DNA of 64,000 nt, from positions 124,001-188,000 of IMG/VR virus record IMGVR_UViG_3300028558_000791. One strand, given 5' to 3'. Below the pieces are notes generated by a model. That model was given only the letters and a program-made list of their open reading frames with translations. It made no database searches and had not been told where the DNA came from. Every line of letters starts with the position of its first letter. Position 1 is the first letter of the stretch. A program made the position numbers and the translations under genes. This document shows positions 48,924 to 49,254 of the stretch, one piece after another.

Positions 48924-48997
48924 TCTCGCATAGCTCAACAGGTAGAGCGCCGTCTCTAAAACGGAAGAAGGGGGTTCGAGCCCCTCTGCGGGAGCCA
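48924..48997 (+). tRNA. amber suppressor tRNA (CUA), G73
   Basis: TCTCGCA/TGCGGGA acceptor, CCGT-CT-CTA-AA-ACGG arm, GTTCGAG T-loop, CCA. Confidence 0.85.
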
Positions 48998-49022
48998 TGA
49001 TATATTCATCTACGAGGTCATC

Positions 49023-49172
49023 ATGTTAGTACTAGAATTTTTATTGTTATCTTTGGTGGGCGGTACAGTCTTAGGAGTTAGCTGGCGCATGTTCGATGAA
49101 TGGCGTGAGCGAAACCAGCGCGAATCTGTCCAAAAGTCTGTAATCCAAGTGGATACGACTAACAGACAATAA
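49023..49172 (+). CDS. small membrane protein (49 aa)
   Basis: GAGG SD; N-terminal TM helix; lies between the suppressor tRNAs. Confidence 0.55.
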   Translation: MLVLEFLLLSLVGGTVLGVSWRMFDEWRERNQRESVQKSVIQVDTTNRQ

Positions 49173-49182
49173 TGCGCCCAAT

Positions 49183-49254
49183 GCGCCGATAGCTCAGTGG
49201 CAGAGCAGAGACCTCTAAATTCTCGTGTCGTGGGTTCAAATCCCACTCGGCGCA
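49183..49254 (+). tRNA. amber suppressor tRNA (CUA), A73
   Basis: GCGCCGA/TCGGCGC acceptor, GAGAC-CT-CTA-AA-TTCTC arm, GTTCAAAT T-loop; CCA not encoded. Confidence 0.88.

What the first reader, a model, noticed from the sequence alone, without database searches (positions are those of the whole stretch)
48924..49254. Two different amber-suppressor tRNAs side by side
Seen: both fold as cloverleaves with a CU-CUA-AA loop but have unrelated bodies. tRNA 1 has U1-A72 and G73, a 4-bp anticodon stem and a GTCTCTAAAAC arm one base from the classic Trp arm (GTCTCCAAAAC). tRNA 2 has G1-C72 and A73, a C31-U39 mismatch and no encoded CCA. Neither has tRNA-Pyl architecture. Inference: they may be charged by different synthetases, so TAG could be decoded as two different amino acids. 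Known code-15 phages typically read TAG as Gln.
Basis: partly seen in the sequence, partly recalled or inferred. Interest (0 to 1): 0.8.

Follow-up and report, generated by a model that had tools for sequence, protein, structure and literature searches.

The report
Two amber suppressors, TAG-free huge phage
A roughly 498-kb soil phage carries two genuine, conserved stop-codon-reading (UAG) tRNAs, one built on a tryptophan tRNA and one on a lysine tRNA, yet in the third of its genome I could read TAG is almost never a stop and never an in-frame codon, so the pair looks like a general UAG read-through device rather than a second genetic code.

Summary
ARAGORN and Rfam call two canonical tRNAs with anticodon CUA at 48924-48997 and 49183-49255. 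An independent sample reproduces them without a difference. Diverged relatives conserve them with CUA unchanged and with compensatory stem changes.

tRNA 1 has a tRNA-Trp body (CCA to CUA) but a tRNA-Gln-type acceptor end (U1-A72, G73). tRNA 2 has a tRNA-Lys body (CUU to CUA) with A73. By published identity rules they should attract different synthetases: GlnRS for tRNA 1 and LysRS for tRNA 2. The phage's own TrpRS and TyrRS are alternatives. Charging is untested.

The implied code-15 setting is not supported. I read 166 kb (33%) of the 498-kb genome, including the terminase, portal and capsid genes. There is no in-frame TAG and no coding gain when TAG is read as sense. TAG ends 1 of 182 ORFs of at least 100 aa, against 22% of off-frame stop triplets and about 5% of stops in three control phages.

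Best reading: early-expressed suppressors make UAG a read-through codon in the infected cell, and a TAG-purged phage genome is immune. This is a new variant of a known kind. Two thirds of the genome remain unseen.

The parts
48924..48997 (+). tRNA 1: amber suppressor, anticodon CUA at 48956-48958. It has a tRNA-Trp-like body, U1-A72, G73, a G27.A43 mismatch and an encoded CCA.
   Evidence: ARAGORN. Rfam 49.2 bits. Cloverleaf. Best BLAST hits are phage tRNA-Trp genes. Identical in four genomes except for one D-loop base.
49183..49255 (+). tRNA 2: amber suppressor, anticodon CUA at 49215-49217. It has a tRNA-Lys-like body, G1-C72, A73 and a C31.U39 mismatch, and reads 'CTA' in place of CCA.
   Evidence: ARAGORN. 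Rfam 64.7 bits. Best hits are phage tRNA-Lys(CTT/TTT) genes. The ortholog in L001 has compensatory changes at 7:66, 28:42, 29:41 and 30:40 and the same loop.
48799..48918 (+). tRNA-like RNA 5 nt upstream of tRNA 1. It has an acceptor stem, D stem, anticodon arm (loop UAUUUAA) and T arm (loop UGCGAAU), plus a structured insertion of about 50 nt in the D loop. Its role is unknown and it may not belong to the suppressor function.
   Evidence: Cloverleaf-like minimum-energy fold, z-score -2.66. RNAalifold on 4 genomes gives 27 pairs, 5 of them with compensatory changes. No Rfam family matches and ARAGORN does not call it.
49023..49172 (+). Small ORF (49 aa, one hydrophobic helix) between the two suppressors.
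   Evidence: Read from the sequence. A diverged copy lies at the same place in L047.
45036..45063 (+). Perfect sigma-70 consensus promoter-like site (TTGACA, 16 nt, TATAAT) at the head of the block that holds the tRNA-Thr genes, tmRNA, suppressors, IF3 and tRNA-Arg.
   Evidence: 12 of 12 consensus positions match. This is a consensus match only.
46047..46403 (+). Phage tmRNA, tag ANDNAFAMAA. It is a possible partner that rescues ribosomes which run to an mRNA end after read-through.
   Evidence: ARAGORN. Rfam RF00023, 142 bits. The link between suppressors and tmRNA is from PMC3985003.
308..1270 (+). Phage tryptophanyl-tRNA synthetase, a candidate alternative charger of tRNA 1.
   Evidence: TIGR00233 trpS, 282 bits against a cutoff of 177. 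PF00579.
1685..2902 (+). Phage tyrosyl-tRNA synthetase (bacterial type with an S4-like C-terminal domain), a candidate alternative charger of tRNA 2 through A73 and U35.
   Evidence: TIGR00234 tyrS, 378 bits against a cutoff of 114. phrog_9270.
26811..28064 (+). RNA ligase gene. It is the only ORF of at least 100 aa ending in TAG in the 166 kb read, and a TAA follows 7 codons later.
   Evidence: PF09511.
45079..45775 (+). Four tRNA-Thr genes covering all four anticodons (TGT, GGT, AGT, CGT). They are part of a nearly one-tRNA-per-codon repertoire into which the suppressors fit.
   Evidence: A further cluster just upstream of the window holds Leu x4, His x2, Glu x2 and Arg x3.

Best explanation
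Both genes are functional amber-suppressor tRNAs of independent origin. tRNA 1 is a tRNA-Trp whose anticodon became CUA (C35 to U) and whose first base pair is U1-A72. tRNA 2 is a tRNA-Lys(CUU) whose anticodon became CUA (U36 to A).

They sit in a block with tRNAs, a tmRNA and IF3 behind a consensus sigma-70 promoter. I infer that the host polymerase transcribes them early and that they are cut out of a long transcript. The phage's own CCA-adding enzyme can finish tRNA 2.

In the infected cell they compete with RF1 and turn UAG from a stop into a read-through codon. By identity rules tRNA 1 should insert mainly Gln and tRNA 2 mainly Lys.

The phage is insulated from this. Its genes end in TAA or TGA, and TAG is not used in frame in the third of the genome I could see. 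Which amino acid goes in therefore does not matter to the phage, and an ambiguous pair is tolerable.

The read-through falls on TAG-terminated genes of the host, of its defence islands or of competing mobile elements. The phage tmRNA can clear ribosomes that then reach mRNA ends.

Shown: the tRNAs, their ancestry, their conservation, the purge of TAG stops, and the absence of in-frame TAG in 166 kb.
Inferred: expression timing, which synthetases charge them, and the target and benefit of read-through.
For: tRNAs:
- Both are canonical tRNAs with anticodon CUA.
- Both carry the loop CUCUAAA.
- G27.A43 combined with CUA is reported to improve UAG read-through (PMC13092985).

Conservation:
- tRNA 1 is identical in 4 genomes except for one D-loop base, while the flanking coding DNA diverges.
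- tRNA 2 differs at 13 positions in L001, with four compensatory pairs, and keeps CUA.
- A second sample gives an identical assembly. Contigs from RNA libraries, belonging to relatives, span the upstream ORF, the tRNA-like RNA and tRNA 1.

Ancestry.

Identity rules: PMC9976931, PMC2965240, PMC1483225.

Stop codon use:
- Of 182 ORFs of at least 100 aa, 117 end in TAA, 64 in TGA and 1 in TAG.
- TAG is 22% of off-frame stop triplets.
- Control phages T4, Apostate and LR756500 use TAG for 5-6% of stops. Fisher p = 0.004.

Coding:
- Coverage is 92.7% under code 11 and 93.2% with TAG read as sense. The in-frame TAGs listed at 157 kb all lie upstream of true starts or in spurious ORFs.
- TerL (PF05876), portal (phrog_16240) and a capsid-fold gene (PF25209) are intact.

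Other support:
- Consensus promoter.
- CCA-adding enzyme at L050:17630-18865.
- Read-through caused by suppressors feeds tmRNA rescue (PMC3985003).
Against: - There is no direct evidence of charging or of suppression.
- 67% of the genome was not read and could hold a few TAG-containing genes, release-factor genes or further suppressors.
- The host is unknown, so its TAG usage is unknown.
- Other phages with a tRNA(CUA) keep about 5-6% TAG stops (Apostate, LR756500). A suppressor alone therefore does not force a purge.
- tRNA 1 lacks G2-C71 and G3-C70 of the E. coli GlnRS identity set.
- tRNA 2 could equally be charged by a TyrRS.
- A benefit from reading through host stops is conjecture.
Confidence: 0.5

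Rival explanations
1. Partial code switch. A limited set of genes in the unread two thirds of the genome, for example lysis or regulatory genes, carries in-frame TAG. The suppressors, perhaps with the phage TrpRS, are the code-change module that releases their translation, as proposed for recoded gut phages.
For: - The Borges et al. model and the Jade-phage module of TrpRS, suppressor and RF1.
- TAG is purged as a stop.
- A TrpRS and a Trp-derived suppressor lie in one genome.
- Only 33% of the genome was read.
Against: - Hallmark late genes that are the usual sites of recoding (TerL, portal, capsid-fold gene and about 30 neighbours) have no in-frame TAG.
- No release-factor gene appears among the JGI Pfam calls for 166 kb.
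- Two suppressors with different identity sets would give an ambiguous sense codon, which is costly inside real genes.
Confidence: 0.2
2. Evolutionary intermediate or insurance. TAG stops were lost and suppressors were gained, so that rare TAG nonsense mutations are harmless. There is no specific target. This is the pre-recoding stage of the codon-capture route.
For: - Borges et al. describe standard-code relatives that acquired a suppressor and argue that a rare stop is 'useless but dangerous'.
- The state seen here matches that stage exactly: TAG is neither stop nor sense.
Against: - The model ties stop depletion to low GC. This genome is 42% GC with plentiful off-frame TAG (22%), so the purge looks selected, not mutational.
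- Both tRNAs and their CUA anticodons are held under strong purifying selection across diverged relatives from several samples (rhizosphere and sediment where the origin is on record). That is unexpected for a transient stage.
Confidence: 0.17
3. Orthogonal phage pairs. The phage TrpRS charges tRNA 1 with Trp and the phage TyrRS charges tRNA 2 with Tyr, so UAG is read as Trp/Tyr by phage-private pairs and not through the host GlnRS and LysRS.
For: - TrpRS and TyrRS genes lie side by side, 46 kb upstream.
- tRNA 1 has a Trp body and G73. tRNA 2 has A73 and U35, the bacterial Tyr determinants.
- There is precedent for a TrpRS paired with a suppressor in TGA-recoded phages.
Against: - C35 is a major TrpRS determinant, and E. 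coli TrpRS rejects the CUA form.
- A1-U72 is replaced by U1-A72.
- tRNA 2 lacks the long variable arm of bacterial tRNA-Tyr, and its body matches tRNA-Lys.
- Huge phages often carry assorted synthetases for ordinary decoding.
Confidence: 0.1
4. Non-decoding or defunct. The CUA tRNAs are decoys against tRNA-targeting defence nucleases, primers or decaying gene copies, and do not suppress.
For: - They adjoin an odd tRNA-like RNA.
- They sit in a genome rich in tRNA-repair genes: RNA ligase, Pnk, a Thg1-like protein and RlaP.
Against: - All canonical tRNA features are intact, with an anticodon loop suited to suppression.
- The stems covary while the anticodon is kept.
- The purge of TAG stops is hard to explain without active suppression.
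Confidence: 0.03

Closest known systems
E. coli su+7 (supU) tRNA-Trp(CUA) amber suppressor and its 27-43 mutants
   Same: It has a tRNA-Trp body with C35 changed to U, giving CUA, and it has G73. su+7 is charged by GlnRS instead of TrpRS (PMC2965240). An unpaired 27-43 position raises read-through (PMC13092985). tRNA 1 has G27.A43.
   Different: tRNA 1 is a natural, phage-borne and conserved gene. Its first pair is U1-A72, not A1-U72, and pairs 2:71 and 3:70 are C-G and U.G.
TAG-recoded (code 15) phages with tRNA(CUA): Lak megaphages and crAss-like phages
   Same: The suppressor tRNA(CUA) is encoded by the phage, sits in a part of the genome compatible with the standard code, and TAG is not used as a stop.
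   Different: Those phages have many in-frame TAGs in structural and lysis genes, read as Gln. Here there are none in 166 kb, including TerL, portal and a capsid-fold gene. GC is 42%, not low. There are two suppressors with different identity sets.
Standard-code phages that carry a suppressor tRNA: megaphage G (Sup-UUA plus tmRNA), Acinetobacter Lazarusvirus phages (tRNA-CUA), uncultured huge phage LR756500.1 (tRNA-CUA plus tmRNA)
   Same: Standard code together with a suppressor tRNA. Co-occurrence with a tmRNA in phage G and LR756500. The Apostate tRNA(CUA) shares the 5' strand of the anticodon stem and the anticodon loop of tRNA 2 (GAGAC-CTCTAAA).
   Different: Those genomes have a single suppressor and keep TAG as 5-6% of stops. 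This genome has two suppressors of different ancestry and about 0.5% TAG stops.
'Code-change module' of TGA-recoded Jade phages (TrpRS, suppressor tRNA and RF1)
   Same: A phage TrpRS and a Trp-related suppressor occur in one genome.
   Different: The stop codon concerned is TGA, not TAG. No release factor was seen here. The TrpRS lies 46 kb from the suppressor. No recoded genes lie downstream.
Dual-code-compatible phages of Gracilibacteria and Absconditabacteria, and TAG-free genomically recoded E. coli
   Same: The genome avoids one stop codon both in frame and as a terminator, with a backup stop where that codon does occur. It therefore works whether or not the codon terminates (PMC10746230; PMC6207430).
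   Different: In those cases the avoided codon reflects the host's code or engineering. Here the phage itself brings the tRNAs that abolish termination.

Membership tests
Canonical elongator tRNA (Rfam RF00005) | Cloverleaf with a 7-bp acceptor stem, D arm with G18G19, 7-nt anticodon loop with U33 and a purine at 37, and a T-loop TTCRA. Score above the gathering threshold. | tested here: met
   49.2 and 64.7 bits against a threshold of 29. ARAGORN cloverleaves.
Amber suppressor tRNA | Anticodon CUA, complementary to UAG. | tested here: met
   CUA is invariant in relatives and in a second sample.
Amber suppressor tRNA | The tRNA is aminoacylated and reads UAG in vivo. | not testable with these tools
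   The only evidence is indirect: TAG stops are purged from phage genes and relatives appear in RNA libraries.
tRNA-Pyl | 6-bp anticodon stem, 3-nt variable loop, short D loop without G18G19, and no T-psi-C motif. | tested here: not met
   Both have anticodon stems of 5 positions (4 of them paired), variable loops of 5-6 nt, G18G19 and TTCRA. ARAGORN's label follows the anticodon only.
tRNA-Trp lineage (tRNA 1) | The body sequence is closest to tRNA-Trp genes. | tested here: met
   All hits with E below 1e-3 among 50,697 phage records are tRNA-Trp, at 81-84% over positions 7-66.
Bacterial TrpRS substrate (tRNA 1) | G73, A1-U72, C34, C35 and A36 (PMC9976931). | tested here: not met
   G73, C34 and A36 are present. 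Position 35 is U and the first pair is U1-A72.
Bacterial GlnRS / GatCAB substrate (tRNA 1) | G73, U1-A72, G2-C71, G3-C70, G10, U35, G36, A37 and U38 (PMC9976931). | tested here: inconclusive
   Present: G73, U1-A72, G10, U35 and A37. Absent: G2-C71 (it is C-G), G3-C70 (it is U.G), G36 (it is A, as in supE-type suppressors) and U38 (it is A).
tRNA-Lys lineage and LysRS substrate (tRNA 2) | The body is closest to tRNA-Lys. A73. U35, with U34 and U36 as weaker determinants. | tested here: met
   The best hits are tRNA-Lys(CTT/TTT) of Streptomyces, Xanthomonas and Pseudoalteromonas phages. A73 and U35 are present, position 34 is C as in the CUU isoacceptor, and position 36 is A. The weak 31:39 position suits LysRS more than GlnRS. 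Actual charging was not tested.
Code-15 (TAG read as sense) recoded phage | In-frame TAG codons in genes, and higher coding density when TAG is read as sense. | tested here: not met
   In 166 kb (33% of the genome) coverage is 92.7% against 93.2%, with no conserved gene split by TAG. TerL, portal and a capsid-fold gene are intact. The remaining 67% was not read.
Code-15 (TAG read as sense) recoded phage | TAG is not used as a terminator, and a suppressor tRNA(CUA) is encoded. | tested here: met
   1 of 182 ORFs of at least 100 aa ends in TAG. There are two tRNA(CUA) genes.
Standard-code phage carrying suppressor tRNA(s) | Genes are intact under code 11, and at least one stop-reading tRNA is present. 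| tested here: met
.

The most novel reading that the evidence does not exclude
The phage uses ambiguous UAG read-through as a weapon or takeover device. It has removed TAG from its own genome, and early in infection it floods the cell with two efficient suppressors, which are expected to insert Gln and Lys. Every TAG-terminated host, defence-island, plasmid or rival-phage protein is then extended or sent to non-stop rescue. The phage's own tmRNA and ClpP handle the resulting stalled ribosomes and tagged products. This would be a natural counterpart of the genetic isolation engineered into TAG-free recoded E. coli, run in the opposite direction.
Probability: 0.25. Interest if true: 0.85.

Novelty: new variant of a known kind. 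Interest (0 to 1): 0.6.

Why it matters
If the reading is right, this is a natural genome that has freed one codon completely while carrying the means to abolish its stop function, at 42% GC. Mutational bias cannot explain the loss at that GC.

It bears on three questions.
- Routes to codon reassignment. This may be an 'unassigned and ambiguous' stage held stable by selection, not by low GC.
- The purpose of suppressor tRNAs in standard-code phages such as phage G, Lazarusvirus and many huge phages.
- Whether a virus can exploit genetic-code incompatibility against its host or rivals.

In practice, the phage TrpRS and TyrRS together with two natural CUA tRNAs are candidate orthogonal pairs for genetic-code expansion.

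The case also warns annotators that a tRNA(CUA) does not by itself mean code 15.

Tried and rejected
1. Megablast of the tRNA block against 50,697 phage records found nothing. The only GenBank relative, LR756500.1, is very distant. Its GC is 24%, 12 of about 110 proteins are shared, and there is no synteny. It could not guide me to the late genes.

2. I tried to locate this genome's portal and sheath by searching with the LR756500 homologs. The top 120 hits did not include the 498-kb contig. I then walked along the contig instead.

3. I looked for a repeated motif that would fetch many places of the contig in one scan. None exists.

4. A search with the 3' half of tRNA 2 returned 14 unrelated viral contigs carrying a tRNA(CAT) with the same T arm and acceptor strand. 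I treated this as convergence among A73 class-I tRNAs, not as ancestry.

5. Host inference by exact search of 185,579 species genomes, for the tRNA 1 arm (CCA or CUA form) and for the tmRNA tag, found nothing.

6. TGA as a sense codon was rejected because it lowers coverage to 91.5%. General avoidance of the TAG triplet was rejected: there are 899 TAG triplets on the window's + strand, and TAG is 22% of off-frame stop triplets.

7. Sequencing error was rejected.
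Full report
**What is there**

ARAGORN finds eight RNA genes in the window:
- four tRNA-Thr genes;
- a tmRNA;
- tRNA-Arg(CCT);
- two tRNAs with anticodon CTA, at 48924-48997 and 49183-49255, both on the + strand.

Rfam's tRNA model scores the two CTA genes 49.2 and 64.7 bits, against a gathering score of 29.
- tRNA 1 has U1-A72, G73 and an encoded CCA. It has a G27.A43 mismatch, so 4 of the 5 anticodon-stem positions pair, and the loop CUCUAAA.
- tRNA 2 has G1-C72, A73, a C31.U39 mismatch and the same loop. It reads 'CTA' where CCA would be.

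Both have G18G19 and a normal T loop. Neither resembles tRNA-Pyl; ARAGORN's label follows the anticodon only.

**Source, and whether the sequence is right**

The window is part of JGI contig Ga0265326_10000001, 498,445 bp. A trimmed 480,838-bp form is in IMG/VR. The contig was also assembled in ENA and Logan and comes from a rhizosphere metagenome.

A Logan contig from a second rhizosphere sample covers 48370-49415 with no difference. The CUA anticodons are therefore not sequencing errors.

Two metatranscriptome libraries, one from sediment and one from rhizosphere, hold contigs of relatives at about 93% identity. These contigs span the end of the upstream ORF, a tRNA-like RNA and tRNA 1, with CUA unchanged. 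This is compatible with transcription, but DNA carry-over in an RNA library cannot be excluded.

**Conservation**

Pattern scans found three further genomes that carry tRNA 1: L001 (a 198-kb IMG/VR contig), L047 and L049. tRNA 1 is identical in all of them except for one D-loop base, while the neighbouring coding DNA is barely alignable.

The tRNA 2 ortholog in L001 differs at 13 positions. Four changes are compensatory pairs, at 7:66, 28:42, 29:41 and 30:40. It keeps the following:
- the loop CUCUAAA;
- A73;
- a mismatch at 31:39;
- 'CTA' in place of CCA;
- an identical 21-nt 3' trailer.

This is the signature of tRNAs under selection for function with the CUA anticodon.

**Ancestry**

I compared both tRNAs with 50,697 phage records.
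- tRNA 1's body (positions 7-66) finds only tRNA-Trp genes at significant E-values. These come from Caulobacter phages CcrSC (84%) and CcrBL9, Erwinia phage Stratton and an Acinetobacter phage.
- Laid side by side with CcrSC tRNA-Trp, the D arm, anticodon arm and T arm match. The anticodon differs at one base, CCA against CUA.
- tRNA 2's best hits are tRNA-Lys genes: Streptomyces phage tRNA-Lys(CTT) at 82% over positions 1-61, and Xanthomonas Xoo-sp13 and Pseudoalteromonas J2-1 tRNA-Lys(TTT). Again it is one base from a sense anticodon, CUU against CUA.

**Which amino acids?**

This cannot be computed. I can only compare the tRNAs with published identity sets. The review PMC9976931 lists these for Bacteria:
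- Trp: G73, A1-U72, C34, C35, A36.
- Gln: G73, U1-A72, G2-C71, G3-C70, G10, U35, G36, A37, U38.
- Lys: A73, U34-U36.
- Tyr: A73, G34, U35.

The review also notes that amidotransferases rely on U1-A72.

tRNA 1 has lost C35, and its first pair is U1-A72 instead of the Trp-type A1-U72. It carries G73, U1-A72, G10, U35 and A37. The amber form of E. coli tRNA-Trp is rejected by TrpRS and charged by GlnRS (PMC2965240). Gln is therefore the best guess for tRNA 1, although pairs 2:71 and 3:70 do not fit the E. coli set.

tRNA 2 has A73 and U35 on a Lys body. Amber suppressors with U35 and A73 tend to insert Lys, and changing A73 to G73 shifts them towards Gln. A weak 31:39 position favours LysRS over GlnRS (PMC1483225). 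Lys is the best guess for tRNA 2.

The phage also encodes a TrpRS at 308-1270 and a TyrRS at 1685-2902, both scoring above the NCBIfam equivalog cut-offs. These could in principle serve tRNA 1 (Trp body, G73) and tRNA 2 (A73, U35). I rate that lower than host charging.

The G27.A43 mismatch of tRNA 1 may itself matter. An unpaired 27-43 position combined with CUA is reported to give stronger UAG read-through, and in tRNA-Trp(CUA) to allow some reading of UAA (PMC13092985).

**Is TAG a sense codon in this phage?**

Within the window, 102 non-overlapping ORFs cover 92% of the DNA under the standard code. Every in-frame TAG that lengthens an ORF lies upstream of the true start or in a spurious antisense frame.

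The window could be an early region, so I walked along the contig in 10-kb steps with the look-up of encoding contigs. I assembled record positions 121,653-287,954, which is 166,302 bp or 33% of the genome. This stretch includes:
- DNA polymerase III alpha, RecA, a primase and a sigma-like protein;
- a terminase large subunit (PF05876, 627 aa);
- a portal protein (phrog_16240, 625 aa);
- a gene with a capsid fold (PF25209, weak hit);
- some thirty further large ORFs of up to 1,755 aa.

All of these are intact under code 11. Coverage is 92.7% under code 11 and 93.2% with TAG read as sense. With TGA read as sense, tested at 157 kb, it falls from 94.0% to 91.5%. No release-factor domain appears in the JGI Pfam calls for this stretch. 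As far as one third of the genome shows, including the hallmark late genes that are the usual sites of recoding, the phage uses the standard code.

**TAG is nevertheless almost absent as a stop**

Among 182 ORFs of at least 100 aa, 117 end in TAA, 64 in TGA and 1 in TAG. The exception is the RNA ligase gene at 26811-28064, and a TAA follows 7 codons later.

This is not general avoidance of the triplet. TAG makes up 22% of off-frame stop triplets inside genes.

I analysed three standard-code phages of lower GC in the same way:
- T4, 40 kb: 2 of 35.
- Acinetobacter phage Apostate, 50 kb: 4 of 64. It carries a tRNA-CUA.
- LR756500, 462 kb: 24 of 479. It carries a tRNA-CUA.

Against these pooled controls, Fisher's test gives p = 0.004. 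The purge is therefore real. Low GC does not explain it, and it is not an automatic consequence of owning a suppressor.

**Setting**

The suppressors sit in a block of translation genes:
- a 12-of-12 sigma-70 consensus promoter-like site at 45036-45063;
- four tRNA-Thr genes covering all four anticodons;
- the tmRNA;
- small ORFs;
- a tRNA-like RNA, tRNA 1, a 49-aa membrane ORF and tRNA 2;
- an HNH endonuclease;
- IF3;
- tRNA-Arg(CCT).

Just upstream of the window lies another cluster of tRNAs: Leu x4, His x2, Glu x2 and Arg x3.

Elsewhere in the stretch I read, the phage also encodes the following:
- ribosomal protein S21;
- peptide deformylase;
- trigger factor;
- DnaJ;
- two ClpP proteins;
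- two CCA-adding or poly(A)-polymerase-family enzymes;
- a Thg1-like protein;
- an RNA ligase;
- Pnk;
- RlaP.

The phage therefore brings a nearly one-tRNA-per-codon repertoire of its own. The two CUA tRNAs extend that repertoire to UAG.

**Interpretation**

I propose that the pair converts UAG into a read-through codon in the infected cell, probably from early in infection. The phage genome has been selected to be indifferent to this, with no TAG stops and no in-frame TAG.

What read-through achieves is inferred, not shown. The most economical idea is interference with TAG-terminated genes of the host, of its defence systems or of competitors. Suppressor-induced read-through is known to create substrates for tmRNA (PMC3985003). 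The phage's own tmRNA lies 2.5 kb upstream, and both phage G and LR756500 combine a suppressor with a tmRNA.

TAG-free recoded E. coli show how such incompatibility blocks TAG-using viruses and plasmids (PMC6207430). Phages that avoid TGA so as to work under two codes are a close conceptual parallel (PMC10746230).

The rival explanations are:
- a partial code switch, with TAG-containing genes in the unread 67% of the genome;
- a stable 'pre-recoding' intermediate of the Borges model;
- phage-private TrpRS/TyrRS pairs;
- a non-decoding role.

**Verdict**

This is a new variant of a known kind, a standard-code huge phage with two amber suppressors of different ancestry and a TAG-purged genome. 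The main limitations are that two thirds of the genome were not read, the host is unknown, and there is no functional data.

Noticed in passing
window 48799-48918 (+); also L001:4771-4894(-), L047:6015-6138(+), L049:131-254(-): A conserved tRNA-like RNA lies 5 nt upstream of tRNA 1. It has acceptor, D, anticodon and T arms, but A at position 33, G at position 55, the anticodon loop UAUUUAA, and a structured two-helix insertion of about 50 nt in the D loop. Five pairs show compensatory changes across four genomes. No Rfam family matches and ARAGORN does not call it. In one RNA-library relative, the 256 nt that include this element (48665-48920) are replaced by 114 other bases.
   Followed up: partly
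window 45079-45775 and 51455-51530; record 138,462-141,183 (L013/L022), just upstream of the window: The tRNAs come in isoacceptor-complete sets: Thr with all four anticodons including AGT; Leu CAA, TAG, CAG and GAG; Arg TCT, ACG, TCG and CCT; Glu TTC and CTC; His x2. This suggests a nearly one-tRNA-per-codon repertoire. All 16 other tRNAs encode CCA; only tRNA 2 does not.
   Followed up: partly
window 46047-46403 (+); L047:3645-4002: A one-piece phage tmRNA with tag ANDNAFAMAA. A relative has ANDNAFAPVALAA. No bacterial genome among 185,579 species representatives encodes the exact tag.
   Followed up: partly
window 49255-49275; L001 about 3256-3277 (-): The 21-nt 3' trailer of tRNA 2 (CTAAAACTACTAAAATGATAT) is identical in the diverged relative L001, although the tRNA's own stems have changed. 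It may be a processing or regulatory signal.
   Followed up: no
window 308-2902, 44084-44872, 50816-51445; L016, L021, L024, L026, L050: The load of translation and proteostasis genes is unusually heavy. It includes TrpRS, TyrRS, IF3, S21, peptide deformylase, trigger factor, DnaJ and two ClpP proteins. It also includes a Thg1-like protein, two CCA-adding/poly(A)-polymerase-family enzymes, RNA ligase, Pnk and RlaP.
   Followed up: partly
window 33269-43055 (-): The only sizeable minus-strand block in the window. It encodes an aminotransferase-like protein, a methyltransferase-like protein and other enzymes, and lies near NTP-transferase and RmlD-like genes at 51994-53621. It may be a sugar or DNA-modification pathway.
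   Followed up: no
L022:6625-8121 (record about 128.3-129.8 kb): A 498-aa protein with WGR, PARP regulatory and PARP catalytic domains, which is unusual in a phage. A NADAR-domain protein lies nearby.
   Followed up: no
LR756500.1 193,332-197,824 (L006): The T4-type terminase large subunit of this 462-kb uncultured phage is matched in three separate ORFs, which suggests introns, inteins or inserted endonucleases. The genome uses the standard code (TAG is 5% of stops) and has 26 tRNAs, a tmRNA and one tRNA(CUA).
   Followed up: no
window 49023-49172 (+): A 49-aa ORF with one hydrophobic helix lies between the two suppressors. It is conserved in L047 and replaced by an unrelated gene in L001 and L049.
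   Followed up: no
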